Of a stretch of 64,000 bases of DNA, positions 3,501-32,386 are shown in pieces. This DNA is from Botryllus schlosseri. Its lineage: Eukaryota. The DNA lies in assembly GCA_051294905.1 (NCBI GenBank), contig CM119377.1:7688001-7752000 (forward strand). The letters are read 5' to 3'. The notes under the pieces are model-generated. The model searched no databases. It was given only the letters and a program-made list of their open reading frames with translations, and was not told the origin of the DNA. Position 1 is the first letter of the stretch, and each line of letters opens with the position of its first letter. A program made the translations under genes and the position numbers.

Positions 3501-6500
3501 GGTATCGGAATTCGGAAGTCGACCTCGTTCGGACTCGAACCCGCACCCATTGGTGTTGCAGCCGCGTATTTAACCTCTGCGCTATCTCGCCACCTTGCAG
3601 CCCATGTGCTACTATCGACTGTGTGTGGTGTGGGGCAGGCCTGATACGCAGTAGGCTGGTGCGCCTGCTATCATCGCTGATTTGAATTACCGCTTCTGCA
3701 GCAGTAGCTTTACCTACTCTCTCCCCAATACTGTTACATTTAGGTTGATTATCGTTCGTAATGTCATGCTGTTTTTGGGCTGACACGAAATAAATTCCAA
3801 TTTGCGTGGCGGGCGGCCTAACTGGCTGCGAATAGACTCTGTGACCAAATACTATTTTATTCAAATCCAAATTTTTTGACGGCAATAACTCCGCTTCTAC
3901 TGGCTGGAATTGAACCAAATTTGAAGAACATCGTTTTTATAGACAACCTAATACTTTCATGGGGTGAACAGAAAAATTTCAAATTTTTCGTTATTTATTT
4001 TTATATAATAAATAGATCCTTTCTTATCCCGTAGCAACGCGGCTACTGGTTGGAATTGAACCAAATTTGGTGTGTAGGCTTAAGTTAGGTAACCTAACAA
4101 TTTTATCAAGTAATAGCCAGTACGATTTGAGAAAAAAAGTCATTTTTTAAGACCCCTAATGAACAGGGGTGTATTGAGTTTTGAGCGAACGTTAAAAGGG
4201 TGTACCACGTCGAAAAAGGTTGAAGAGCACTGGAATAAACCACGGCAACTAAAGAAGACGCTCGACTGTAAACCTCATTGTGCCATGATCACACACAAGT
4301 AATCCGGCCATTTGATCGCGGTTCGACTGGTTCACCAGAACCCCACCTGTTGGAATGTTGATCAGCAGCTACGCCTTCGGTAAGTTGTCTCAATCTTGCG
4401 ACCTCGGATTTCAGCTGTTCGACATCTGAAGGGTAAACAAACCAGACATAAAAAACGGGCCTTTGCATATCGCACAACGCCGCAGAGGTCTGTATATTAT
4501 TAACTACGAAGCGGTTGGCAAGGTTAAATTAAGGCCTACCAGGGTTGTAACCAAGTCACGAGGCTCCGAGTCACAAGTCTGTCTCACTTTTACAGGTTCT
4601 GACTCGAGTCAAGTCGAGTTATCTTCAATTCACCACAGAGTCAAGTCCGAGCCCAAGCAAGCGAGCAGAGGGTCGAGTCCGAGTCATAGTATTGTGAGTC
4701 GAGTCCGAGTCATTGTGTTGACTGCTTAGTTTCCAGTTAAAGTCTTGTTAAACCCACTTTTTATAACTCTGTATGGTGATATCGAATACCGTAGTTCGCA
4801 TTTATAATATACTAATTTTCCTCACTTTTTGCAGTTTCTGGCCGCATTTTCAAGTACCAGTGCCAATATGCGAAATCGCAACAGTGTGGTTACTTTACTA
4901 ATCTTCGAAATTACCATGAAATATCAGTCTTGACGGTCTGAGCCTCGATTCATGTGACTTGGTGCGAGTCATGCACAACGATTCGGAGTCCCAGTCAGCA
5001 CACAGATTGACTCGGGTCAAGCCATTTCCGTATTTTGAGAAAATGACACGAGTCATTCCAACCCTGCTGACTACCATCAAATTAACTACCGTAGCTACTT
5101 CCATACACTAATAATATATAGCCTACAGGCGATATCGCGATCGCGGCATAGAAAAATCGGAGCAAAAAGTCATGAATTGACAGACATCGAAGAATAGGAA
5201 AGTCACCACATGATTGGTATTTCGTATATTAGTCTTGGAAAATAAGGCCAGAAACTGTTGAGACTGAGGAAAATAACGATATTATGAATGCGAGCCATTC
5301 TATATCATTCGAGCAGAGTTCAAAAAGTGGGTTGAACCGAATTCAACTCCAAACTGAACACTGAACGCAATGACTTGGACACGGCCCTCTACTCACGGAC
5401 TTGGGCTTGACTCGGTGTTGAATTGAAAATGACTCGAGTCACAAAACTATAAAAGTGAGATTGACTTGTGACTCGGAACTTCGCAACTAGGTTACAACCC
5501 CGACCCGAGTTACTTGCCATGGTTCTGGACGAAGACAATTCTCCTCCATTTCCTCCAATTTTCAATATTTATTTCTAGCCCAGTTCAAATCAGCTCAAAA
5601 TATACCCGTCTCTTTCTCAGTATTACCTTCAAGGTCCAGTCTCAAGCGGGACAGCTCCGTTTTCGCGTCTTTCAATTCGGCGTCCTTTATCTCGACCGAG
5701 AGTTTCAGGGCGTCGACGTCATCCTGGTTGCATTTGTTGTCGTTCGACAGCGAAGACGTTTGATTTCTGCTGTTTGCGAACGTTGCCTCCAGCTGACTTT
5801 GCAAAGCGGAAACCTGATACAAGAAATTGAATGGTATATTCAATTATTCGTATTGAAATATGCCCCATTATTTTCGACTGCAATAATTTCGCTTCGATTG
5901 GTCGGAAGTGAGCAAAAACTGTTGAGATCGTTCTTTTCGTCAACTTACGCACCTGATTTTTGAATTCTTCCACGCTGTCCTCTTTCTCTTTGAGCTCCAT
6001 CGAGACTCCGTCGAGCATGGACTGTAGCGATCTGATCTCGTCGCATTCCTCGTCGCTCTTCTGCTGAAGACGGCACCGTTGCGAGCACACCTCGCTGAGC
6101 TGCTTACGCAGGTCGGCGTTTTCGTTACGGAGAGCTGAAATCAACGCAAAACCGTTGGCTTGGAAGAGATTGGCCGCTTACGTAACATATTTTTACAGGT
6201 CCGGATTCAACCTGGCTCAATGAAAAGCAAAATCATAGTCTACAATTGCATAATACATTCACATTGAAATAAACACAAATGTTTTCAGCTGAGACTCGTC
6301 GGGGGTAAGCGTCAGCCACTCGAGTCATTCTATATTACTTGCTTCCATTCTCGTCTAACAGGACAGATATTTGAGGAATAAGCGCACAAACGCTATTTTA
6401 TCTGTTCAAATAAATGTGTTTAGAGTGAGAAAAATATTGGAGAGTTTCACAGTAGTGAGTTGAGCCCATCTTGATATCAACGATGAACAAGGAACTCTAT

Positions 6501-18500: not shown

Positions 18501-21500
18501 ATTTCTATTTTCGCAATCAGTACCGACGGTCGCTTTCGATCGATACCTGTTTTATCAAATTTCGCGCTCAGCAAGCCGGTCAAAAATTAAAGTCAAATTG
18601 CCTTTAGCAAAATGGAAATCGTGACGTAGACCAATTTCACGAGCAGTGAGATTTGCTCGTGTCCACACCATATAGGACACTATGGTCCAATAGCCAACCA
18701 ATGTTTTACAGAGAGGGTTTCAGATATATATGATTTCATAGAGTACATCAAATCTAGGACATGGCGATTTAGGTGTTTCCAAAATTATACCCGCAGGATG
18801 CCGGTCATATACAAAACTATGTTGAGTGGGCAATGCAAGTCTGAAATACCTACCGGTACAAACTATGAACTATAACTAAAACTCACAAACTCGTCATCGC
18901 GAATTTGCAGCGGGACCGCGTCGCTGGGCTGCACCAGAAGGTCTTTCAGAACCTCGTTGTAGATTTCGACGTAGGACACGCGAAGGAGAAACTCCCTCTC
19001 CGGAGTCTGCGGTAAACAATGGCAAACGATGAGAGAATCGGTAGAGGTAGTAATTTTCAAGTAATGAAGTATTCTAGTCCTAGGCTTACCTAGAAAATTG
19101 TCAAGTAGCAACAGAAAGTGTTCTACACACGCAATAGCTTGAGCAAGTAGCACAAGTGGGCTAAAACCTATTAGAAATATATAATTAGAAATACTTTGTC
19201 ACGACCACCTCCGCATAAACCACTACCCAAGCACCAGCAGAAACCACATAAGCACTTGCGGAATTAGTGCAAGCAGGAGACACCCATTACAGGTAGAATT
19301 ACAAGCATTTATGACCAGGGTTGTATTGACTCGAGCCGCGATATTTTATTGACTCGACTTGAGTCATTTTCTAAAACGTGAGAATTGACTCGACTTGAGG
19401 CAGTTTGTGTATCGACTCCAGGCACACATAATCGCGAGTTGAAAAGGATCGAACTCGAAAATGAACAGTGAACAAAATGACTTGGACTCGGAATCTAATC
19501 TTTGGACCCTAACTCTGACTTGACTAGAGTCAAAACTATGATAGTAGAATTGACTTGTGACTTGGTTACAACCAAGCTAGTTATTGACCACTACCGTTAC
19601 CGACCTCAAGGATTCATTTCAAAGTCATACCTTTTGTATGTGGGAAAAAGTGTCCCGCACCGCCATCGGAATAATGCCTGGATTGTGCCCGTTCGGGCTG
19701 CCCATCATGGTGTAGGTTTTCCCGCTGGACGTTTGACCGTACGCGAATACCGTGCCTGAGGTGAAACACAAAGTATACAACGAGCGGCCGAGATATTTCG
19801 TACCACGCCCAGACGTTACCGTTGAATCCTTTCATGGCCTCTTCGACAATGGGCTCAACGATCTCTTCGTAGACATCTCTCGTTTCTTCGTCGCTGCCAA
19901 AGACACGGTCTGAAACATGCAAGAGGCGTTACTGTTATCGGACGCTACTAATACAGATATTGAAAGTTGCGGGAATTCAAGTGTGGTAGTAGCATTCTTC
20001 TGAAAGTTGGTCCCGACTAGGGCTGGTCAAATTTGAGTACCCAAGCATTATACTTCGTGTCACCTTTATAACGTCATATGGATGATGTGGAAAGTTCACA
20101 TATGCACGGTACCTATCACACGGCCGCCAAAAAATAATACCAGTTCAACAACAGATAAAATTAATTGGTTATTTTCACGGTGTACCCATTTAAAGGGGCA
20201 CTGCCCTGTAAAAATGATGGTGTCTGAAATTGATGGCCAAAACGAAAAAAAATTTTGGCCGCCACCGTAACGGAGCTGCAATGTATTGAAATTTCCACAA
20301 AAACATCATGCTCCAGCAGTCACCAAAGATCAAACTTTATATAGTTGTCAGCCGATGTTATGAAGGAAATACGTCGTACACGACAATGTGGCTTAGATAC
20401 CGCGTTCAACGGAAGATGTTTAGTCAGGAGATTCATGTCAAAATCGAGCCTAGTGTATTCATTTCTGTCGTGTACGACATATTTGCTTCATAACATCGGC
20501 TGACAACTATATAAAGTTCGATCTCTGCGTGACTGCTTGAGCGTGAAGTTGCTACTGAAATTTCAATAAGTTGCAGCTCCATTGCGGTGGCGTTCTGAAG
20601 AAAACGGCTGCGGCCAAAATTCTTTTTTCGTTTTGCCCTTCAATTTGAGACCACATCAATTTTAGAGTGCAGTGCCCGTTTAATTGCACTACGTGACAAT
20701 GAGGGCATATCCAGCCGAGATCAAAGAGGGGTTTCACTTCGAGTAGCATATCTTGTCTTTATGACTCCACAGAGACTGTGTGGCGGGTGTTACTACTCTT
20801 TCTTATGGCTTGTTATTTCACTGACACCTCAATTGCTAGCACACACACCAGTCAGTTACTACACACTACACAGTAAGCCTACACACCGGGATAATAACAT
20901 CAACAGAAAAAAATGTCAGGTGATATCATTAAGATAACTTAACTAGGCTACTAGTCCTGCTCAACTCTCTAGTTCAGCGTCAACACGGTACTGTATTTCA
21001 ACAAATAATGGGGTGGCAACACTAATCAAGAATCTCTTTAGTGAGCAAGCAACAATTTATCCACAGAGTGAGAGAGGTCTGCAGAACATGGCGAGGACCA
21101 AGGACCACCTTCACTGCACAACACTTAACGTGATCTTACCAAAAATGTACGGATCTCGACGGCCATCGGATTTGATTTCATGAGTGTCGTAAGTCCAATA
21201 AACTTCGGCGCCATTCTCTCTGAAAATACAAGTCTATGAATTAATATCCCGGGAGTAACGAGTTGCCATTTGAGATGTGAAGATATAGATCAAGGATGGG
21301 CGCCCCTACTACGCGCGCGAGCCGCGTGTTAAAAATTATAGTTTTCTGCAAGGAGCCGCAGCGCGAAAATTGAAAAATGCAAAATCTATTCCGTCACAAT
21401 CAAATGTAGACTATCGAATGCAGTTCATTATCGTGTGGTGAAATCAGACTGATTTGGCCAAACTCTGCAGTTATTGCGAGTCTTTACAATACAGGTAGGA

Positions 21501-22022
21501 AGAGCCGTACTCACCATTGTTAGCCCAGAAATTGTCGTGACCTGCGCCACCAGAAGATTTCGTTCAAAAATATTTAAATCTTGACATTTTGACGAAATTT
21601 TGACATGTCAAAAAAATCGCCATAATAATCAGGTTCATTGCTGAACCCAAGGATCTATCATCGATTGATGGACCATTGATGTGGCTGTAACTTTGATGTG
21701 AACTTGATTCGAGAGTTCAATTGCAAAAAGTTTCAAGCCTGCAGTGCAACCTTCCCCAAATTCTGACAAGTGTTACGTAAACCACAAGGAAAGTGACATC
21801 TCGAAAACAATGCAAATATATTTAATATGTGATAGAATGCGTCAGTTTATCATCAGGTTCAAGGTTCAACATCCGTAGCAAAATTGCAATCATTAAAGAC
21901 CCGCAATCAGAGCGTCTGCGTGATGAACTGAGAAGCAGCAAGTGTTAGAATTTCATTAAGACTTTGGTATCTTACCTGGAAATGAGTGGACGCACTCTAA
22001 TTGCTACCTTTACTGAGTTCAT
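447..22022 (-). CDS. CENPE: Centromere-associated protein E (kinesin-7) gene, 19 exons in window, 3' part off the left edge
   Basis: Exons join in frame with GT-AG sites: 22022-21976, 21219-21140, 19909-19820, 19755-19631, 19006-18887, 18011-17862, 16959-16876, 16813-16659, 13981-13855, 12788-12669, 11358-11215, 10693-10579, 10517-10420, 8213-7886, 6134-5953, 5813-5627, 4425-4347, 956-816, 575-447. Motifs: P-loop [56 protein letters not shown], neck [16 protein letters not shown], then coiled coil. Confidence 0.95.
816..956 (-). CDS. CENPE: CENP-E exon 18
   Basis: ...[20 protein letters not shown]; gtaag donor; phase 2-2. Confidence 0.85.
1125..2121. mobile_element. Non-autonomous hAT (Charlie-like) element with nested hAT-like insert at 1447-1752
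   Basis: TIRs caggggtcaccaac / gttggcgacccctg; perfect 8-bp TSD ctttacag. Confidence 0.88.
2684..4232. mobile_element. Non-autonomous hAT element carrying a nested SINE and a pogo-like MITE fragment
   Basis: TIRs cagtgctcttcaacc / ggttgaagagcactg; perfect 8-bp TSD gaataaac. Confidence 0.9.
3318..3593 (-). mobile_element. tRNA-derived SINE
   Basis: A box TAGCGCAGAGG, B box GGTTCGAGTCC, AAAC-type tail, 14-bp TSD cttgcagcccatgt (3304-3317 / 3594-3607). Confidence 0.85.
4347..4425 (-). CDS. CENPE: CENP-E exon 17
   Basis: [18 protein letters not shown]; phase 1-2. Confidence 0.85.
4540..5066. mobile_element. GACTC-repeat hAT-type MITE (family Z)
   Basis: Termini cagggttgta / ccaaccctg; many gactcgagtc units; same family as 26170-26695; partial copies at 1-260, 5325-5502, 7780-7868. 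Confidence 0.75.
5627..5813 (-). CDS. CENPE: CENP-E exon 16 (coiled coil)
   Basis: VSALQSQLE...RLDLE; phase 0-1. Confidence 0.88.
5953..6134 (-). CDS. CENPE: CENP-E exon 15 (coiled coil)
   Basis: [13 protein letters not shown]...EEFKNQ; phase 1-0. Confidence 0.88.
6826..7387. mobile_element. Unclassified TIR-like element with catgctca repeats
   Basis: Imperfect inverted termini (gacatatgagcat / atgctcataagtc); flanked by direct ttatagt(c); related copy at about 56420-56760. Confidence 0.5.
7886..8213 (-). CDS. CENPE: CENP-E exon 14 (coiled coil)
   Basis: E/K/R-rich heptads, GC-rich codons; cag / gtggg sites. Confidence 0.88.
8300..8905. repeat. Degenerate tandem repeat, ~40-bp unit
   Basis: Recurrent tttggattcgagaacaacag...ttcaaagattttggcc variants. 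Confidence 0.65.
8909..9899. mobile_element. TIR element (Kolobok-like, TTAA context) containing a G-rich TTAGGG-bearing minisatellite at about 9355-9765
   Basis: ~100-bp inverted arms built of gaactcgg/ccgagttc units; ttaa at both flanks; internal 22-23-bp unit GGGATATTAGGGTTGCCGGAGGT. Confidence 0.7.
10420..10517 (-). CDS. CENPE: CENP-E exon 13
   Basis: After a 61-nt intron; open in phase 1, ends at gtatgt phase 0. Confidence 0.75.
10579..10693 (-). CDS. CENPE: CENP-E exon 12 (RRETWCPG)
   Basis: Matches CENP-E RRVTWC motif; cag / gtaag sites. Confidence 0.9.
11215..11358 (-). CDS. CENPE: CENP-E exon 11 (coiled coil)
   Basis: [42 protein letters not shown]; phase 0-0. Confidence 0.88.
11883..12466. 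mobile_element. Palindromic P-superfamily-like MITE
   Basis: ~270-bp inverted arms, termini catagtgtcc / ggacactatg; 7-bp TSD gttgaag. Confidence 0.85.
12669..12788 (-). CDS. CENPE: CENP-E exon 10 (motor end, neck)
   Basis: [31 protein letters not shown]. Confidence 0.93.
13500..13707 (-). mobile_element. Diverged SINE related to 3318-3593
   Basis: Shared ttatagcacgg...tgtaag...gaggaggag core and degenerate A/B boxes. Confidence 0.5.
13855..13981 (-). CDS. CENPE: CENP-E exon 9
   Basis: [31 protein letters not shown]. Confidence 0.95.
15029..16625. mobile_element. Harbinger/PIF-like non-autonomous element with nested pogo-like MITE (15369-15992)
   Basis: TIR aggctgctgcacactgg / ccagtgtgcagcagcct; taa/aaa flanks. 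Confidence 0.7.
16659..16813 (-). CDS. CENPE: CENP-E exon 8 (switch II)
   Basis: [31 protein letters not shown]. Confidence 0.95.
16876..16959 (-). CDS. CENPE: CENP-E exon 7
   Basis: ILESRE...VKISQL; tag / gtaag sites, phase 0-0. Confidence 0.92.
17862..18011 (-). CDS. CENPE: CENP-E exon 6 (switch I)
   Basis: [16 protein letters not shown]; cag / gtgag sites. Confidence 0.95.
18047..18684. mobile_element. Palindromic P-superfamily-like MITE, second copy
   Basis: Same arms as 11883-12466; 7-bp TSD gtccaat. Confidence 0.85.
18887..19006 (-). CDS. CENPE: CENP-E exon 5
   Basis: [24 protein letters not shown]; cag / gtgag sites. Confidence 0.95.
19316..19580. mobile_element. Family Z MITE, shortened copy
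   Basis: cagggttgta start; gactcg units; gttacaacc end. Confidence 0.6.
19631..19755 (-). CDS. CENPE: CENP-E exon 4 (P-loop)
   Basis: [18 protein letters not shown]; follows a 64-nt intron. Confidence 0.95.
19820..19909 (-). CDS. CENPE: CENP-E exon 3 ([31 protein letters not shown])
   Basis: Kinesin DRVF...GFNG; 90 nt; splice sites fit. Confidence 0.95.
20194..20679. mobile_element. Palindromic Kolobok-like MITE
   Basis: TTAA on both sides; termini aggggcact / agtgcccgt; long inverted arms. Confidence 0.75.
21140..21219 (-). CDS. CENPE: CENP-E exon 2 ([26 protein letters not shown])
   Basis: tttcag acceptor, gtaag donor, phases 2/1 fit neighbours; VYW matches CENP-E. Confidence 0.9.
21976..22022 (-). 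CDS. CENPE: CENP-E exon 1 ([15 protein letters not shown])
   Basis: ATG at 22022; kinesin N-terminal VRVRP-type motif; donor gtaag, phase 2. Confidence 0.92.
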
Positions 22023-22258: not shown

Positions 22259-22645
22259 ATCATCATCATCATTGGTGTATTAGCAATTTTATCAGTTCAA
22301 TACACCACAAAAAATGCGATAAAATGAAAAGAAAGGAAGATGTTATGAATCAGATCAATGTATGATCGTTGCGTCGTCTTCATGGGCATTTATATTTTCA
22401 TCCACTCGAATCAAAAAATGTACAATGGGATACACAATACACAATTTGATTTAATTACCAGATGTTGAAACGGACGGGTAGTTCCCACAATCAAACATTA
22501 TACTCGCGGCCGAGTGTTCAACTCCAGTACCAATTTAGTATTAATTTTATCATTTCAAAACACCACAATGCTGCGATACGATGAAACGATTGAAAGTTTT
22601 CGAAACAACTTGGAGTAGTCTTTCAAATCAGACACCCACTCAGTT
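22259..22645 (-). mobile_element. Two short 3'-UTR fragments of the L2/CR1-like LINE
   Basis: catcatcatcattgg...tattagcaattttatcagttcaatacaccac matches 59350-59420; a second diverged piece lies at about 22545-22645. Confidence 0.7.
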
Positions 22646-25600
22646 CGATTATAGATCTATAGTTCGATCTTGATCTTTTGGAAGTTATTCCTTGACCCTT
22701 TCGTCCGTTTTCGTGTACTGTACGCCAGTGTTGGGATGACTCGAGTCAAGTTTTTCGTATGACTTGACTTGACTTGAGTCACTTTGAAAAAATGACTTGA
22801 CTTGACTTGACTCGGCGCTTCAGAAATGTGGATTGACTCGTGACTCGGAGCAAAATTTACGAGTCAGTTTCAAGTCATCAAGTAAACGGTCTCGATTAAA
22901 TCTCTGTATCTTTTTTATGTTCGGACTATTCGCGATACGCATGTGTCACTTGTGAGAGCAACCACACTGTAAACGAAAATGGTGTGTTTTCGCAATTCAC
23001 ACCCTAGCGTAGGGTGTGTTTTGAGTCATCACACTTATTGGGTACTAAATTTGTCATTTACACCTAAGCTATTGGTGGAAATAAGCCGAATACACCCCTA
23101 TACACACTTACCATAAAATATACACCCCAAGCATTGGCATTTGGGGTGAATTGTTAGATATTACACCTTTTGTCAGACAATATGAAGTTTGGGATTCAAT
23201 CCGCGCTAACTGCTTCCACAAGCTTCCACAAAACTGTTGAAGATTTAAGTCTGTGTCGGTCAGAAGCCTGGTTAAGCCTGCTGTGTCTAACTGTAGGTCG
23301 TGTAGGACATATTCTCTTTGGGTTTGAATTATCCACCGAAAATGCGTGTTTTCGCCCACTTTATTGTTGTCCGTGTCCGTGTCATTAAGGCTTCTTGGGT
23401 AGGCTTAGGCAATTTTGCATTGTTCAGTTTTCATGGATTTAACCCGGTTCGATCAAGTAAATTCGCCTACGCATATAGCTTCAGCTTCAGTGACAAATTA
23501 GCATTCGTTGTATTAGTTCGTGTGCTACATCGGCATGAATGAATAATAGCTAAGTCCGCAATATCATATTGTAATTCACATTTATCGTGCACGGCGGTAC
23601 TCGTACTTTGGCTGAAATTTCACCCTGGCTACTATAGTGTGACCGATGTATCTCAAGTGTGTGGCAAAATACGACACATTATGAAGTTGCCACGATATTG
23701 GTTTATAATTTCTTTCATGCCTCGTCAAATGCACAATTGTACGAATGTACGTAGGCTATATCTATGTACAAAATATATCAGGCCTATGCCGCACGGCATT
23801 AGTGTATAACCACAGTATAATGCAGGTTACGGGTATTTAAAGCTGGGAATACTAGAAGGAGTCAAATTTTAGCCACAAACTTACGTGAGCAGTACGCAAT
23901 ATGGGCGTAGCAAGAATTCAAATTAAAATGGGACACGAGGTTACGTCACGGAACAATCATTGAAGTGGGCGAAAGAGGGACTAAATTGGGGCAAAGTTTC
24001 CTGGTTATTTTCATATCTATATTGTTGTGTTATTCACTATTTGGTAGCTTTATGAATTGCACACTAAGCCTAACCGACAACGACAATTCGCATACAGCTT
24101 TCGGATCGTATCAATGGTTCGATCTGTGAAGATGAATCTAGTACTGCAAGACTTTTTTAAGCTTATTATGATGTAATCTGCAGCTTCACAGCTATCAAAT
24201 CCACATTTCTGATAAATCAATTATAGTATACATACAAATATTCCGGAGATCCTTAACTTCAATATAGTTATTGCATCAGTTAGTCAATTGTGACATCATA
24301 ATGGAACATACAAACCGTCGTCACCAGAACAGCTGCTGCTATGTTTCGCTACAGCTATGTAAAATGTTTCGTTATATGCCGTATTTCCGCGCTTACGAGA
24401 CCAGACTGGCTATCGACTGACCGTATTAGTTGTCGTGAATCTTGGAAGAAAGCCTCATTCGAGATTGAAAATATCTGAATGGTGAGTTACATTTCGTATC
24501 GGTACTATAGTAGCAGAGAACATTTGTTCCGTAGCGTTTCCGGTACAGATCCGATTCCTGTTACTCAGTGTTGCAGCTGTACTTAACAGAATTATATGTA
24601 GCAAGCTGGAATTTTAAACGTACCGGTAGTAACGATACATTGAATTCACATACATTGTTGTATCATCAGTACCGATACCAATATCCAAGACACAGTAGCT
24701 CAATGGCTCTAATGGAGATACTGTTGACAGGTGCAGCATCAGCTTTGATTATAAACTACGGTAATTTGGGCTTGATCAACATCGTTTGTAAGTGCATTGA
24801 AAAAAAATCGATTGTCGTTATATAGGTAAGTATTATGATTACCAAGCACATCACGACCTGTTTAAGTGTAAAGGTAGCCTACCACTGACTATGCAGAGTT
24901 ATGTTATCAGCCTATCACCCTGTCATTATCACTGAGCTATATACACATTATATGTTATGTTATGTTATGACAGGAAGGTAAACATATTATCTATTCTACT
25001 TCAGACTTGCATGGGCATAGATCGCAAATTTGGGGCTCTTGAAGAATGAAATTATCGATTTCTGCTCATGAGAAAACAAGTGTAACATACAAACGGCAAA
25101 GGGCTGAAGAATATGAAGCAATGGTATCTGAGGTGAGCAATGGACATTTGACGATGAAAGCTTTCGATCCCCGTAAATTGGGGCCAGTAAATGGTAATGA
25201 TATTATGACATGGGTGAAAATATGACGATGCTATATTGCTATCACTATGAATATGAGAGACTTGACTAGGAACAGGCTTGCCTTAGTAGGCTATTGAACA
25301 TAATTTGCAGTGCCTCCCTCAGACTATCTGCTAAGAGTATGTGACCCATCAACTAGACTACTTCTTTTGAAACTACTTCTCTGAGTTCTGTTCATATATT
25401 TATTTTAATTTGAAGCAGCTTGACATGGATTTGACATAGTCACTTCTATATGCTTGTCATTGAGTAGAAATTTACATCTACTGCTTGAGTAGCAATGCGC
25501 ACTACTGCGGTCAACTGGGTGTGCAACAATGCACGGATTAGCTGGGTCTTCAATGTTTTGACCAATATGAAGAGGCAAACATAGCCTTGCCAAAGTTGAT

Positions 25601-26169
25601 CAAACTGTCCTTTTGATCAATATAAACAAATCATAATATATGCACTTCTTGACTCATGATATGACATACACAAATGACATGACATGCACAAATCTGCTTT
25701 TTGTTAGATTCAAGGACTGATTGCTATTAGTAGCAGACTCTTACTCTGTGAATGTGAAATCAAATATGTTGTTGGTGACTAATATACTATGCGTAGGAGA
25801 GTTGCAAAATTGTATTTTAACTTGCTTATTAACAAGCATTAAAGAAAGTCAAGGCTACAACATCAGTACACATTTTGGATGTCTTGGGCGTTTCGAATCC
25901 AACCCAAATTATCAACTGAATGTTTACCGTATGCCTCATGGTTATTTTTTCAATTTTAGGATGCTGCTATACAAGCAAAATATCGGGGAATTTCAACCAA
26001 ATCGACGTCGCATTTAACGGTAGAAGCGTATGATGCGAAACAGTAAAGGATCGTTATCAAACAGCTTATATTACAAGGTAATCATTATCATCCAGATAAT
26101 TTGCTAATTTCGAAGTATAAGACAAGTCAACGTTTTCAAATCAAGACACAGTTAGACATGTATCTGTGG

Positions 26170-26695
26170 CGGGGTTGTAACCAAGTCACGAGGCTCCGAG
26201 TCAGAAGTCAATCTTACTAATATAGTTTTGACTCGAGTCAGGTCGATTCATTTTTCTTTGACCACTGAGTCATGGTATTATGACTCGAATCCGAGTCCAA
26301 GTCATTGTGTTTACTGATCAGCTTCCAGTTGAAATCTTGTTCAATCCACTTTTTGTAACTCTGTTTGGTGATATCGAATGGTTCGCATTTATAAATATAC
26401 TAATTTCCCTCACTGGTCGAAATTTTAAGTACCAGTACCAATAGGCGTAATCTAAATAGTGAGGTTACTTTACTATTCTCCGAAATTTCAAAGAAATGTA
26501 GGTCTTGGCCGTCTGAATGTTGAGTCATATGACTAGGTTCGAGTCATGCGCAATGACTCAAGTCCAAGTCGAGTCAATACACTGATTGACTCAAGTCGAG
26601 TCCTTTCTATATTTTGAGAAAATGACTCGAGTCAAGTCGAGTCATCAGAAAATCGTGACTCGAGTCAATTCATGACTCGAGTCAGTACAATCCTG
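26170..26695. mobile_element. Family Z hAT MITE, full length
   Basis: 8-bp TSD atctgtgg; copy B has the empty site (single atctgtgg at about 28694). Confidence 0.92.
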
Positions 26696-27311
26696 ATCTG
26701 TGGTCCCTTTGAATCCATTCTGAAAGTCAATATTGCCTGAGGAGGAAACGTTTCAAACGTGTTTTGAATCAATATTAAATTCATATCAAAGTCCTATATC
26801 TGATTTTCTCTAAATTTTAGAGACCGCATGCAGCAAGAGCAAGATTACATTAGAGGAATTAACCAATCTTGGGACTATGCTGCGAAAACTGAAAGAATTG
26901 TTATCAAGCCAGCAGGTATTACAACTTTGTTAACGACACCTGATGTCAACTTTCGTAGTCGCATATAGGAAGTAAACCAAAGCAGAGATGGTCAAAGTTA
27001 CTAGCGTTGCTACTCAAGTCGATGTAGAAATGCTGCCGTCAATTTATACTCAATTACAAGTAGATACAACAGTTCCCAATACAAGTCAAAACTACGTCAA
27101 GTGGAATCAGAATACAAAATGTCGGAAGAATAGTTAAGTATGGTAAGCAGTTTTTCGGGAGTTTCTGTTTTGAAAATTGCGATATGAATGTTCGCGATTA
27201 TTGTAAAGTTACTAATAGCATATGACACTACTAACAGCAAGAATCTTCAAAAATATATTCAGTTATCCTGATATAGGCGGTGTTGCCAGACTTGGACAAC
27301 TAGATATTCTA

Positions 27312-27568
27312 GCGAGATAGTGAAATGGTTGTGCGTCCGGCTTCTCGATCGGTAGGTCGCGTGTTCAATCCTCGGCCGGGTCAGACCAAAGACTCAAAAA
27401 CTGGTATTCGCGGCTATCCTGGTAGGCGCTCAGCAATCAGGGATAGCATGGAGGAGAAAAAAAACGGGGGTGCAGATTAGATGACCTTACTATAAACGCC
27501 GTATCGCATGTCCGTCGTCAAAAAGCATCTCGATGGTGCAGGCGAAAAAGAATACCATATCTCTCTCT
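27312..27568 (+). mobile_element. tRNA-derived SINE
   Basis: A box TAGTGAAATGG, B box GTTCAATCC, ggtcagaccaaagact linker, CT-repeat tail; absent from copy B. Confidence 0.8.
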
Positions 27569-27743
27569 AAATATACTAATTGAGGCCATTGTAATTTGTG
27601 AAATGTTTCTATGCTCTAATTCTAATTCTAATCGAATTTATGAAATCTTTCTATGGTCTAATTTTAATTATAATCCAACGTATGATTTTCCTGATAATGC
27701 TACAGTAGTATTGTATAGTGCGAAACGTGCCAAGCTTGCTGTA

Positions 27744-28416
27744 CAGCAGGGGTGTTCAAAAATGACTTTTTATTCTCAAATTATTGTGGCTACTTGATGA
27801 AATTGTTAGGTTACCTAATTGAAGCTTGCACACTAAATTTGGTTCGGTTCCAACCAGCACCCGCATTGCTACAGGAGACGAAAGTTTTTTTATTTATTAT
27901 ATAAAAATGAGTCAAAAAAATTCAAAATTTTCTGTGCACCCATGCAACCGTTAGGTTGTCTATAAACAATGCCCACCAAATTTGCCTCAATTCAAACCAT
28001 CCGAAGCGGAGTTATTGATGTCGAAAACTTTGGATTTGAATAAAATAGTATTTACGGTGGGCACAACTGTAATAAATGATTTTAAAAATCGGTCACCGTA
28101 AATACTATTTTACTGAAATCCAAAATTTTTCGACGCCAATAACTCCGCTTCCACTGGTTGAAATTGAGCCAAATCGGTTGAGCATTGTTTCTATAGAAAA
28201 CCTAACAATATAATGGGTGAACAGAAAATTTTAAATTTTTTTTACTCATTTTCATATAGGCCTGATAAGTAAAAAACTTTGTTCTCCTGTAGCAATGCGG
28301 CTACTGGTTGGAATCGAACCAAATTTGATGTGCAGGCTTCAATTAGGTAACCTAACAATTTTATCAAGTAGCCAGTACGATTTGAGAGAAAAAGTCATTT
28401 TTGAAGACCCCTAGTG
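27744..28416. mobile_element. Tc1/pogo-like palindromic MITE
   Basis: TA then cagcaggggtgttcaaaaatgac; long inverted arms; paralogous copy at 29489-30125. Confidence 0.75.
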
Positions 28417-29488
28417 CACATATCAGATGACTTGGGAGTTTATAATCCAATCCAAATTGTCAACTAAACGTTTATACTTCGTGGTTATTTTTTCAATTTT
28501 AGGATGTTATGATACACGATCATGTCAGGGCATATCAACCAAGTCGACGTCGCATTGAACCGTAAAACCGTATGCTTCGAAACAGTGATGGACCTTTATC
28601 GAACAGCACATATTGCAAGGTAATCATTAGCTTCCAGCTAATTTGCTAATTTCCATATATGAGGCAAGTCAAGGTTTCTATAATCAGACTAGTATCTGTG
28701 GTCGCTTCGAATCCACTCTGAAAGTTAATATTGCCCAACCAGGAAACGTTTCGTGTTTTGTATTAATACCAAAGTAGTCAGATTTAAATCAAGTCCATGC
28801 ATGTCTTTCTCTGATTTTCTTCAAATTTAGGATGCTGCTTAAAGACTGCATGCTGCAAGAGCAAGATTCTATCACAGGAACTAACGGAGTTTGAGAGTAT
28901 GATGCGAAAACTGAAAGACTCGTTATCAAGCCAGCAGGTATGACAACTTTATTAGCGACACCTGATGTCAACTTTCGTAGTCGCATATATGAGGTAAACC
29001 AAAGCAGAGATGGTCAAAGTTACCAGCGTTGCTACTCAAGTCGATGTAGAAATACCGTCGTCAATTTATACTCGATTACAAGTAGATGCAACAGTCCCCA
29101 GTACAAGTCAAAGCTACGTCAAGTAGAAGTAGAATACGAAATGTCGGAAAAATAGACAAGTATGGTAAGCAGTTTTTCGGAGGTTTCTACTTTGGAAATT
29201 ACGATATGAATCTTTGCGACTAATATAAAATTACTAATGGCATATGACACTACTAACAGAAAGAATCTTCAAATTATATTCAGTTATTTCTGATACAAGC
29301 GGTGTTGCCGAACTTGGACAACTATAGATATTCTAGTTGTCTAATTATACTAAATGAAGCTCTAATTCCAATTCTGATCGAATGTATGAAATCTTTCGAT
29401 AGCCTAGTTTCATTTCTAATTTAATGTCTGGTTTTCCTGGAAATGCTACCGCAGAACTGTATAGTGCGAAACAGCCAAGCTTGCTGTA

Positions 29489-30670
29489 CAATAAGGGTGT
29501 TAAAATGATTTTATTCTCAAATTCTACTGGCTACTTGATAAAATTATTAGATTAGCGAATCGAAGGCTACACACCAAATATGGTTCAATTCCAACCAGAA
29601 GCCGCATTGCTGCAGAAGGAAGTTTTTTATTTATTATTTAAAAATGAGTGAAAAAAATTCAAAATTTTCTGTTTACCTAGGAAATTGTTAGGTTGTCTAT
29701 AGAAACGATGCCCACCAAATTTGGTTCAATTCAAACCAGCGGAAGCGAAGTTATTGATGTCGAAAAATTTGGAATTGAATAAAATAGTATTTACGGTGGC
29801 TACAATTGTAATAAATGATTAAAGAATCGGTCCCCGTAAATGCTATTTTATTCAAATCCAACCGCTTCCACTGGTTGGAATTGAGCCAAATCGGTTGAGC
29901 ATTGTTTCTATAGACAACCTAATAATTTAATGGGGTGAACAGAAAATTTCAAGTCTTTTTTTATTCATTTTCATATAATAAACAAAAAACTTTCTTCTCC
30001 TGTAGCAATGCGGCTAGTGGTTGGAATCGAACCAAATTTGGTGTGCAGGCGTCAATTAGGTAACCTAACAATTTTATCATGTAGCCGGTAGAATTTGAAA
30101 AAGTAATTTTTGAACACACCTATTCTACAGTAGAGTTGTTCAAGAAAAAACTTTTTTCCAAATCTCACTCGCTTGGTGACTAAATTATCAGGTTGTCTAA
30201 GAAAACGCTGCACACCAAATTTGACTCAATTCCGACCAGTAAAGGCAGTGCAATCTTGAATTGAAAGTAGAAGCAGAGCTATTTGAGTTTTTCGTTGATA
30301 ATCCCCAATCCAATGGGGATTCCAACTAGAAGAAGCAGAGCTATTTGAGTTTTTCGTTGATAATCCCCAATTCAATGGGAATTATCAACGAAAAACTCAA
30401 ATAGCTCTGCTTCTACTAGTTGGAATATAGTCAAATTTGTTTTGCATCGTCTTTGAAGACAACCCAACAATTTCATGAGGTTGACAGGAAAATTTGAAAT
30501 TTTTTTCTTTTTTTTCCTATTAAATTAAAAATTTCAATTCAAGATTGCACGGCCTTTACTGGTTGGAATTGAGTCAAATTTGGTGTGCATCGTCTTCTTA
30601 GACAACCTGATAATTTAAACACAAAGCGAGTGAGATTTGGAAAAAAAGTTTTTATTGAACAACCCTACTG
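29489..30670. mobile_element. Two abutting Tc1/pogo-like MITEs (29489-30125 and 30128-30670)
   Basis: They share the TA at 30126-30127; second copy has termini ta-cagtag(a/g)gttgttcaa / ttgaacaaccctactg-ta. Confidence 0.75.
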
Positions 30671-32386
30671 TACAGTGTACAGACATTTGCTATTCTCATG
30701 CTCATAAGATGAACTATGATTTGATATTAACGGAGTTTGATTCAACTTTTCGCGATTCAGTAATGCTAATTCTAATCTAATTTGTTAGCTAGAATTATAA
30801 TTTTAATCTAATTTCAAACTGTGTAGCTATAATTTTAATTCTACTTTAATTCGAAAAAAAATCTAATTTGGAAAAAGGGAACGTTTTCTAGTTGTCCAAG
30901 TCTGCCTGGTACATGCGGTTTATCCATAAATTTCCATCTTGTCGATGCCTAATTGCCCACACATCAGTGATCGTGTGTGAATATGTTTCCTATAGCGGTA
31001 AGTTCACCGTATCGGGCCACAGTCTGTACTGCAATGCCTTAGCGAGTGAAACATCTGATTTTTTGTAAGTACTCTGTGAAAATATATATACTTGGTAACG
31101 GCTTCTATTTTTGCGGACTTCGTTAAGTTATCATAGCATATGTGCCTGTTAATTGGGTTGTGAGTATGCATTTTGATTTCAGGATGATGCCACAAGTTCT
31201 TGCTGAAGATAGTGACTCAACCTTCGCTGTACAAAGAGTGTTTTGCGGAAACCTGGAGGAGGCGGCTTCCCAATATGCAATATTCTTCGAGCAGTATTTT
31301 CAGTGAATTTTTTTCTCCGTCGCTGGGATCTCTGTTTTTGTTATTTCACGAACTATGTTTCCATTTTATGTTAATATGGTTCAATTGATATCGAATATAT
31401 GCATTGCAATCAAGAATGTTTATATGCAATAGTGTGTCATTTGGCAGAAGATACAGGATTTCAAGTAGGGTGTATATATTGAAATTCCGCCCCTATCAAT
31501 TCTAGAGGCTAGGGTGGAATATGCGATATACACCGCAAGGAATGGGGTGGATTCTGGTGATATACACCCGCAGGGTTACGTAAGTTCTGTTTTCGTGTAC
31601 CACCTTTTGGGGTGAGTATACCCACTCTTTTCGCTAAGAGTGCAGTCATTCACTGATTGTACCTTTCAGTGGCCGCCCTTGTTACATCACAAATAAATTG
31701 ACCGAAAACGAGCTGATGACAGCTTACGTTTATGTGAAATCAGAAGCATAATCTAAAGCAAACGTATCTTTGTTTCTTAGACGGCTTACATCGCGCAGTG
31801 CCCACCTTAGCCGACTTCCTTGTATGAATTGAATGGAACGAATGTAGTTTATGCGTTTATATTCTCACGGATGTGTAGATGGGGACTGGGGAGTGTATTA
31901 TACCATATCAATAATGTTTCAACTTCTCGACGCTTCGTATTCGATCCTCTATTTTGCCTCAAGTATTTTATTAGCTGCTCTACGTCTGCGTGAGCGATAC
32001 AACGCCCTTTGGCATGTATATTAGACTTTATACTCGTTATTGATGCAAGATATATGACAAATACATCTGTCTTTCACAAATCTAGCAAAATGTAATGACT
32101 TTGAATCATCACTCATACTTCGAAAAACCAATTTGACTTGAATAGTGACTTGACTTGACTCGAGTCACCTCCAAAAACAAGTGACTTGACTTGACTCGAG
32201 TCACCTTCGAAAATCGATTGACTTGACTTGACTCGAGTCAAAATGTGCAATGACTCGAAATGACTCGGGACTCGAAGGTAGTGACTTGATCCCAACACTG
32301 CTGTACGCACGTCGCACACGTCCTGGTCGGGTGTTTTTTACTATGCGCTTTTTTTTTTGTCAAGACGTCATATATATACTATTCAC

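What the first reader, a model, noticed from the sequence alone, without database searches (positions are those of the whole stretch)
22726..32300. 9.6-kb nested transposon: hAT MITE split by an 8.7-kb CACTA/EnSpm-like cargo element
Seen directly: the outer ends are a perfect 12-bp TIR (cagtgttgggat) with a perfect 8-bp TSD (ctgtacgc) 9.6 kb apart. Inside, at 22965 and 31642, sits a second pair of imperfect CACT-starting termini with a CA 2-bp duplication and tacacc subterminal repeats. Established: 8-bp TSDs mark hAT elements; CACT termini with 2-3-bp TSDs mark CMC/EnSpm. Inference: a large EnSpm-like element inserted into a ~0.9-kb hAT MITE. Because the outer TIRs are intact, the whole block could in principle move as one cargo-carrying unit. 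It begins 0.7 kb upstream of the CENP-E start codon.
Basis: partly seen in the sequence, partly recalled or inferred. Interest (0 to 1): 0.72.

Follow-up and report, generated by a model that had tools for sequence, protein, structure and literature searches.

The report
Jumping gene nested inside another
An 8.7-kb defective cut-and-paste transposon landed inside a 0.9-kb copy of a very abundant small transposon, 0.7 kb upstream of a kinesin gene in a sea-squirt genome; this is real but ordinary, and nothing shows the pair moving together.

Summary
The block 22726-32300 has a perfect 12-bp inverted end and a perfect 8-bp duplication. Its two arms (22726-22964 and 31645-32300) lie joined as an uninterrupted ~0.9-kb element at 18 other distinct sites examined. 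About 9,900 exact ends of this family occur genome-wide, so roughly 5,000 copies.

Those intact copies carry CA once at the break point. The window carries CA on both sides of an 8,678-bp insert (22965-31642). That insert belongs to a family with 283 exact termini (~140 copies). In 14 of 15 paired copies the two flanking dinucleotides match (mostly TA, also TG, CA and AA).

The nesting and its order are therefore shown. The superfamily labels rest on structure only. The outer element is hAT-like (8-bp duplication, CAGTG start). The inner one is CACTA/EnSpm-Mirage-like (CACT...AGTG ends, 2-bp duplication, TACACC repeats only in its terminal 200 bp).

No transposase or any protein domain was found in this copy. 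Its "cargo" is a 1.7-kb tandem duplication plus passenger repeats, and two sister copies share all of it.

The MITE/insert junction is unique among the 40 best-scoring of 853 candidate matches, so there is no sign that the 9.6-kb block has moved as a unit.

Other notes of this scan describe CACTG-ended elements elsewhere in this genome.

The parts
22718..22725 (.). Left copy of the outer 8-bp target-site duplication CTGTACGC
   Evidence: Read directly; identical to 32301-32308.
22726..22964 (+). Left arm of the outer non-autonomous hAT-like element. Includes the 12-bp TIR at 22726-22737 and GACTTGAC/GACTCGAGTC subterminal repeats.
   Evidence: 92-97% identical to 40 scored genomic copies. In intact copies it continues directly into the right arm.
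22963..22964 (.). Left copy of the 2-bp CA duplication made by the inner insertion
   Evidence: CA is present once at this point in all but one (a truncated copy, L018) of 27 intact sequences aligned here.
22965..31642 (+). Inner 8,678-bp non-autonomous CACTG-ended element (subfamily A). Imperfect TIRs lie at 22965-22986 and 31621-31642.
   Evidence: The ends are paired at 14 subfamily-A and about 11 subfamily-B loci. There are 283 exact termini in the genome. The interior is collinear at 97% with two sister copies.
23059..23167 (+). Left subterminal TACACC repeats (4 copies)
   Evidence: the motif is confined to the terminal 200 bp of the element.
31469..31568 (+). Right subterminal TACACC repeats (2 forward, 1 reverse)
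25865..28413 (+). Unit 1 of an internal ~1.7-kb tandem duplication, enlarged by two later insertions
   Evidence: Self-comparison: 80-88% identity to 28413-30122.
28413..30122 (+). Unit 2 of the internal tandem duplication
26170..26695 (+). Passenger: a second hAT-like MITE with an 8-bp duplication ATCTGTGG (26162-26169 and 26696-26703), inserted in unit 1
   Evidence: Filled versus empty comparison of unit 1 and unit 2. It is a high-copy repeat (depth peak; other copies in the window). It is present in sister copies.
27313..27568 (+). Passenger: a SINE-like high-copy repeat ending in a CT run, absent from unit 2
   Evidence: depth peak and read boundaries at 27522-27568. ARAGORN finds no tRNA.
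27748..28412 (.). Foldback (palindromic) repeat, repeated at 29485-30121 and at window 3847-4165
31643..31644 (.). Right copy of the 2-bp CA duplication
31645..32300 (+). Right arm of the outer hAT-like element, with the TIR at 32289-32300
   Evidence: 80-95% identical to about 40 scored genomic copies.
32301..32308 (.). Right copy of the outer 8-bp duplication CTGTACGC
22020..22022 (-). Likely start codon of the neighbouring kinesin-motor gene, 704 bp from the outer element
   Evidence: The ORF reads [13 protein letters not shown]. Downstream exons hit Pfam Kinesin PF00225.

Best explanation
Two successive cut-and-paste insertions produced this block, and both elements are now passive.

First, a ~0.9-kb non-autonomous hAT-type element of a family with roughly 5,000 copies inserted 0.7 kb upstream of a kinesin gene and duplicated 8 bp (CTGTACGC). 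Later, an 8.7-kb non-autonomous member of a ~140-copy family inserted at a CA dinucleotide 239 bp into that element and duplicated the CA. That family has CACTG ends, a 2-bp mostly-TA duplication and TACACC subterminal repeats.

The inner element encodes no recognisable transposase, so it must have been moved in trans by an autonomous relative (inferred, not seen). It arrived already carrying its internal 1.7-kb tandem duplication, a second hAT-like MITE and a SINE-like repeat as passengers, because sister copies at other loci have the same interior.

Structurally the inner family fits the CACTA/EnSpm-Mirage-Chapaev (CMC/CMCT) group best. The 9.6-kb block is a nested insertion, not a demonstrated composite transposon.
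For: Shown:
- The outer TIR and duplication are exact.
- The arms lie joined in 18 distinct intact copies, of which 12 have perfect and 15 near-perfect 8-bp duplications.
- The empty site reads ...GAGAGCAAC CA GTCATTCA... with CA once.
- The inner ends are paired at about 25 other loci, with matching 2-bp flanks in 14 of 15 pairs.
- The termini pattern gives 283 hits against 0 for the control; the outer terminus gives 9,939 against 10.
- The interior 24800-29800 is collinear at 97% with the copies at C2:6211049-6219854 and C8:21986866-21996715.
- Intact outer-family copies are 89-95% identical to the window's joined arms (median 92.5%). Inner subfamily-A sisters are 95-98% identical. This fits the older-host, younger-guest order.
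- No Pfam domain was found in 30 ORFs of at least 55 aa in the insert or in 6 ORFs of the arms.
- TACACC is confined to the terminal 200 bp.

Literature: CMCT lineages share 5'-CA..TG-3' termini and make 2-5-bp duplications, and include TA-duplicating EnSpm-like lineages; hAT elements usually make 8-bp duplications (PMC12730594).
Against: - No transposase was seen for either family, so both superfamily labels are structural.
- Pfam Transposase_21 (PF02992) finds nothing in the 495-Mb genome. That search is exon by exon and its control rang nowhere, so it is weak evidence.
- The TA preference would also fit the PIF/Harbinger-ISL2EU group.
- Most TACACC repeats have the same orientation at both ends, which is not the classic symmetric CACTA layout.
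Confidence: 0.85

Rival explanations
1. The 9.6-kb block is a functional composite: a hAT transposase recognises the intact outer ends and moves the whole block, inner element included, as cargo.
For: The outer TIRs and duplication are perfect. In this genome nested repeats are demonstrably co-mobilised in the other direction: the hAT-like MITE at 26170-26695 travels inside the inner family. One outer-family copy with the same duplication, GAAGATAT, sits in a unit of at least 1.45 kb present on two chromosomes. Some outer-TIR pairs lie 1.7-4.5 kb apart; these were not examined.
Against: The 100-bp left junction matches in full only the window itself among 40 scored of 853 candidates. The next best hit (L082) has no MITE sequence. 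The 19 left and 19 right flanks of sister copies read all differ from the window's MITE junction sequence. A tenfold increase in length is expected to lower transposition efficiency (general knowledge of cut-and-paste elements).
Confidence: 0.04
2. The nesting is as described, but the inner family is not CMC/EnSpm-like. It would belong to a superfamily that duplicates TA, either PIF/Harbinger-ISL2EU (PHIS) or Tc1/mariner-pogo.
For: About 60% of flanks are TA. Harbinger-type transposases are very abundant in this genome (891 candidates). Harbinger relatives with 2-bp and TA duplications are described (PMC12730594). No CMC-type transposase was detected.
Against: 6 of 16 insertions have TG, CA or AA duplications, which does not fit the strict TA of Tc1/mariner. 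None of 150 scored DDE_Tnp_4 hits lies inside any family interval I could define. CAC...GTG termini, large size and clustered subterminal repeats are CMC hallmarks (PMC12730594; general knowledge of En/Spm).
Confidence: 0.15
3. The structure is an assembly artefact: a repeat-induced misjoin placed an 8.7-kb repeat copy inside a MITE.
For: Both partners are multi-copy repeats. Short-read contigs break exactly at 22964/22965 (table 8), so I have no read-level proof across the junctions.
Against: A misjoin would not create a precise 2-bp duplication of the very dinucleotide that is single in 26 of 27 intact sequences aligned. Nor would it leave both arms collinear to the base with those copies. 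The window has no N.
Confidence: 0.02

Closest known systems
Non-autonomous hAT elements (Ds-like elements and hAT MITEs)
   Same: 8-bp target-site duplication; short (12-bp) TIR beginning CAGTG, which fits the hAT 5'-YARNG start; high copy number; no coding capacity. Among 15 duplications, position 2 is T in 9 and position 7 is A in 9, the direction of the hAT nTnnnnAn target preference (the consensus is from my own knowledge).
   Different: At 870-950 bp it is longer than a textbook MITE. No transposase remnant is present and no autonomous partner was identified here, so membership is structural only.
CACTA/EnSpm-Mirage-Chapaev (CMC/CMCT) DNA transposons, in particular the 2-bp-duplicating Mirage type and the TA-duplicating 'ESTA' lineage of fungi (PMC12730594)
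   Same: 5'-CAC...GTG-3' termini, a 2-bp duplication within the 2-5-bp range of the group, a TA bias, large size (7-12 kb), clustered subterminal repeats, and deletion derivatives (L056, about 1.5 kb).
   Different: Plant CACTA elements make 3-bp duplications and end in CACTA, whereas this family ends in CACTG and makes 2-bp duplications. Most of the TACACC repeats have one orientation at both ends. No transposase or accessory protein is recognisable in this copy. Pfam Transposase_21 is not detected in the genome.
Nested transposon insertions in general (for example the layered retrotransposons of maize intergenic DNA)
   Same: A younger element interrupts an older one; empty-site paralogues give the order of events.
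   Different: Here both layers, and a third layer inside the guest, are DNA transposons and other small repeats.

Membership tests
hAT superfamily (outer element) | 8-bp target-site duplication | tested here: met
   CTGTACGC lies on both sides. Of 18 other copies, 12 have a perfect and 15 a near-perfect (at most one mismatch) 8-bp duplication. hAT usually makes 8 bp (PMC12730594).
hAT superfamily (outer element) | Short TIRs starting 5'-YARNG | tested here: met
   The 12-bp perfect TIR starts CAGTG. The consensus itself is from my own knowledge.
hAT superfamily (outer element) | Derivation from, or mobilisation by, a transposase with the hAT dimerisation domain | tested here: inconclusive
   No Pfam hit in the 6 ORFs of the arms.
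CMC/CMCT (CACTA/EnSpm-Mirage-Chapaev) (inner element) | 5'-CA(C)...(G)TG-3' termini | tested here: met
   CACTG... and ...AGAGTG are conserved in 283 exact termini. The feature is described in PMC12730594.
CMC/CMCT (inner element) | 2-5-bp target-site duplication | tested here: met
   The 2-bp flanks match in 14 of 15 pairs, and the empty site in intact host-element copies shows CA once.
CMC/CMCT (inner element) | Clustered subterminal repeats (binding sites of an accessory protein in En/Spm) | tested here: met
   TACACC occurs 7 times, all in the terminal 200 bp. Binding was not tested.
CMC/CMCT (inner element) | DDE transposase with C2C and H3-4H motifs in an autonomous family member | tested here: inconclusive
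   There is none in this copy. PF02992 finds nothing in the genome, but its control also rang nowhere. The longer family members could not be fetched.
Tc1/mariner-pogo (inner element) | Strict TA target-site duplication | tested here: not met
   TG, CA and AA duplications occur in 6 of 16 insertions, including this one.
PIF/Harbinger-ISL2EU (inner element) | DDE_Tnp_4 transposase inside family members | tested here: inconclusive
   None of 150 scored hits (of 891 candidates) lies in a known family interval. Only part of the intervals and of the candidates was covered.

The most novel reading that the evidence does not exclude
The CACTG family would be an animal lineage of EnSpm-like (CMCT) transposons that duplicates a pyrimidine-purine dinucleotide (mostly TA). 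It would be comparable to nematode Mirage or the fungal 'ESTA' lineage, and its autonomous partner would sit among the 10-12-kb copies. It also routinely ferries other transposons as passengers, so layered blocks like this one could occasionally be re-mobilised whole.
Probability: 0.2. Interest if true: 0.35.

Novelty: new member of a known kind. Interest (0 to 1): 0.15.

Why it matters
It matters mostly as annotation. The block gives a clean, dated example of layered DNA-transposon insertions 0.7 kb upstream of a kinesin gene. It also gives exact ends, duplication length and copy numbers for two repeat families of this genome: roughly 5,000 copies (about 0.9% of the genome) and about 140 copies.

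With that much target DNA, roughly one insertion of the inner family into the outer family is expected by chance (140 x 0.009 is about 1.3; my inference). The nesting therefore needs no special explanation.

The only wider point is that large non-autonomous elements here carry smaller transposons with them when they move.

Tried and rejected
The 8.7-kb and 10-12-kb copies were therefore never read.
2. Pfam on 30 ORFs of at least 55 aa in the insert and 6 ORFs of the arms gave only sub-threshold noise.
3. Pfam PF02992 against the genome gave no match. PF00536 (SAM_1, to test earlier notes of a SAMD3-like gene in CACTG elements) gave 29 hits, none inside a known family interval. PF13359 gave 151 hits, none inside.
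4. RNA and DNA runs were laid on 22500-28499. Only 508 RNA reads mapped, and 99% of them ran on into unlike sequence (repeat fragments in other transcripts). There were no canonical splice joints. Contigs break at repeat boundaries. So there is no verdict on expression, splicing or presence/absence in other individuals. A loose end at 25283 turned out to be an 8-bp indel variant of a sister copy, not a splice.
5. The big protein search with the 86-aa ORF 28895-29152 gave one hit, a repetitive 554-aa protein without Pfam domains that matches a short Cys/Asn-rich motif. I judge it spurious.
6. The word search with the 60-aa ORF 25043-25222 gave only a 58-aa ORF on a 3.1-kb ENA contig, presumably a sister copy.
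7. Rfam gave only sub-threshold miRNA-like hits on the foldbacks. ARAGORN found no tRNA.
8. The idea that the two arms are two separate MITEs was rejected: they are collinear to the base with single intact copies.
Full report
**Observation.**
- CAGTGTTGGGAT at 22726-22737 is exactly complementary to 32289-32300; the 13th base mismatches.
- CTGTACGC flanks both sides (22718-22725 and 32301-32308).
- Inside, CACTGTAAACGAAAA... begins at 22965 and ...TTTTCGCTAAGAGTG ends at 31642, with CA on either side.
- The two inner termini match at 16 of 22 positions.
- TACACC occurs seven times (one on the opposite strand) in the 8,678-bp insert: four within its first 200 bp, three within its last 175 bp, and none in the 7.9 kb between. 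Background in the window is 0.48 per kb.

**The outer element is one interrupted copy of a very abundant family.**
- Searched separately against the window's own genome (G000, 495.5 Mb; the window is C7:7688001-7752000), the left arm (22726-22964) and the right arm (31645-32300) each find dozens of copies at 80-97% identity. At many loci the two hits abut to the base, for example C13:23354003-23354241 followed by 23354242-23354915.
- I joined the arms in a script and compared them with the fetched loci. This gave 25 junction-spanning alignments at 89-95% identity.
- Eighteen distinct copies with both ends are 867-1,162 bp long. Twelve have a perfect 8-bp duplication and fifteen have at most one mismatch.
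- The 14-nt terminus CAGTGTTGGGATSA occurs 9,939 times against 10 for the reversed control. That is about 5,000 elements, or roughly 0.9% of the genome.
- An 8-bp duplication is the usual hAT signature (PMC12730594). The CAGTG start fits the hAT YARNG consensus, and the duplications lean towards nTnnnnAn (T at position 2 and A at position 7 in 9 of 15 each). Both consensus patterns are from my own knowledge.
- No transposase remnant is present in the arms.

**The insertion and its order.** In 26 of 27 sequences from intact outer-family copies aligned at the break point, the sequence reads ...GAGAGCAAC CA GTCATTCA..., with CA once; the exception (L018) is truncated there. In the window, CA stands on both sides of 22965-31642. 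The inner element therefore arrived after the outer one and duplicated 2 bp. No 3-bp reading fits: the neighbouring bases differ.

**The inner element is a member of a real family.**
- Its first and last 400 bp each find about 40 scored matches. These pair up on the same contig and strand into 14 copies at 95-97% identity (subfamily A, 7.3-17 kb) and about 11 at 91-93% (subfamily B, 6.1-11.7 kb).
- The two nucleotides outside the termini are identical on both sides in 14 of 15 pairs: TA in ten, TG in two, CA in two and AA in one. Over 40 single flanks, TA makes up 60% and nearly all are pyrimidine-purine.
- A degenerate 20-nt pattern covering both termini has 283 exact hits against 0 for the control. 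That is about 140 copies.
- Lengths cluster at 8.70-8.77 kb, with others at 7.1-7.6 kb and 10-12 kb. L056 is a deletion derivative of about 1.5 kb.

**What the insert contains.**
- No ORF of 55 aa or more hits any Pfam family.
- Self-comparison shows a tandem duplication of a ~1.7-kb unit (25865-28413 and 28413-30122, 80-88% identity).
- Unit 1 was later enlarged by a second hAT-like MITE at 26170-26695, with its own 8-bp duplication ATCTGTGG, and by a SINE-like repeat at 27313-27568. Both stand out as high-copy peaks in read depth.
- Each unit ends in a 0.66-kb foldback, and another foldback lies at 30126-30672.
- The whole interior 24800-29800 is collinear at 97% with the copies at C2:6211049-6219854 and C8:21986866-21996715. 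Seven other copies lack only 26805-27627.
- The architecture, passengers included, therefore existed before this copy was made and was moved as part of the element. I found no host-gene cargo.
- A possible first coding exon (ATG at 25047, GTGAGC donor at 25133) is matched only by a 58-aa ORF on a short ENA contig.
- An exon-like 86-aa ORF, kept open in unit 2 only, has no credible homologue among 1.84 billion representative proteins.

**Superfamily of the inner family.**
- CAC...GTG ends, a 2-bp duplication, large size and clustered subterminal repeats fit the CACTA/EnSpm-Mirage-Chapaev(-Transib) group. That group is described as sharing 5'-CA..TG-3' termini and making 2-5-bp duplications, and it includes EnSpm-like lineages with TA duplications (PMC12730594).
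- Strict-TA Tc1/mariner is excluded by the TG, CA and AA duplications.
- A Harbinger/ISL2EU relative is not excluded. However, none of 150 scored DDE_Tnp_4 hits falls in a family interval.
- Pfam Transposase_21 finds nothing in the genome. This is weak negative evidence.
- Earlier notes of this scan report CACTG-ended elements in this genome with a spliced SAMD3-like gene and an apparently intact ~10-kb element of the CMC kind. I could not link them to this family. A SAM_1 search gave no hit inside the intervals I know.

**Does the block move as a unit?**
- A 100-bp probe across the left junction matches in full only the window. The runner-up (L082) owes its extra 14 bases to chance and has no MITE sequence.
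- None of the sister copies' flanks read (19 left, 19 right) shows the MITE's junction sequence.
- Only 40 of 853 candidates were scored, so this is good but not exhaustive evidence.
- With the outer family covering about 0.9% of the genome and about 140 inner copies, about one such nesting is expected at random (inference).

**Context.** Exons of a kinesin motor lie on the minus strand at 18.9-19.9 kb (PF00225). An ORF reading [13 protein letters not shown] puts the likely ATG at 22022-22020, 704 bp from the outer element. The block therefore sits in the gene's 5' flank. Any effect on the gene is untested.

**Limits.**
- Reads laid on 22500-28499 were uninformative for splicing, expression and polymorphism.
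- The right junction was not probed separately.

Noticed in passing
window 26162-26703: A 526-bp hAT-like MITE (ends CGGGGTTGTAAC... and ...GTACAATCCTG, GACTCGAGTC subterminal repeats) with a perfect 8-bp duplication ATCTGTGG sits inside the inner element. Sister copies on other chromosomes share it, so it has been carried along as a passenger.
   Followed up: partly
window 27313-27568: A SINE-like high-copy repeat with a B-box-like GTGTTCAATCC motif and a CT-run tail, absent from the duplicated unit 2. ARAGORN and Rfam do not recognise it.
   Followed up: partly
window 27748-28412, 29485-30121, 30126-30672; also 3847-4165: Foldback (palindromic) repeats of a dispersed family. They give sub-threshold miRNA-precursor-like Rfam hits (for example mir-3913, 76.6 bits against a cut-off of 100), which I read as hairpin mimicry.
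   Followed up: partly
window 25047-25132: A possible first coding exon on the + strand (ATG, 28 codons, then a consensus GTGAGC donor). It lies in the stretch with the highest non-repeat RNA read depth. A 58-aa ORF on an ENA contig is 92% identical (P0001). No function is known.
   Followed up: partly
L005 (G000:C12:12270616-12274258) and L010 (G000:C3:17303293-17306958): Two copies of the outer MITE on different chromosomes have the same duplication GAAGATAT and share 1,451 bp at 96%, including several hundred bp outside the MITE. That copy therefore lies inside a larger repeated unit.
   Followed up: partly
G000:C10:4715906-4749506: Two inner-family copies in opposite orientation (4717450-4726324 and 4740436-4747962) are each flanked at exactly 1,053 bp by a DDE_Tnp_4 hit, mirror-wise. 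This looks like an inverted segmental duplication.
   Followed up: no
G000:C1:16584433-16601730: Two inner-family copies lie 7 bp apart, head to tail. Family copies also cluster in a few Mb-scale regions (C8 21.9-23.2 Mb, C10 4.6-4.75 Mb, C13 13.7-15.8 Mb).
   Followed up: no
window 18863-22022 (minus strand): Kinesin-motor gene with the P-loop exon GQTSSGKT.
   Followed up: partly
run X19 (organism B), laid on window 22500-28499: A run labelled with a different organism holds both repeat families at 95% identity or more. It is either a close relative or the same species under another label.
   Followed up: no
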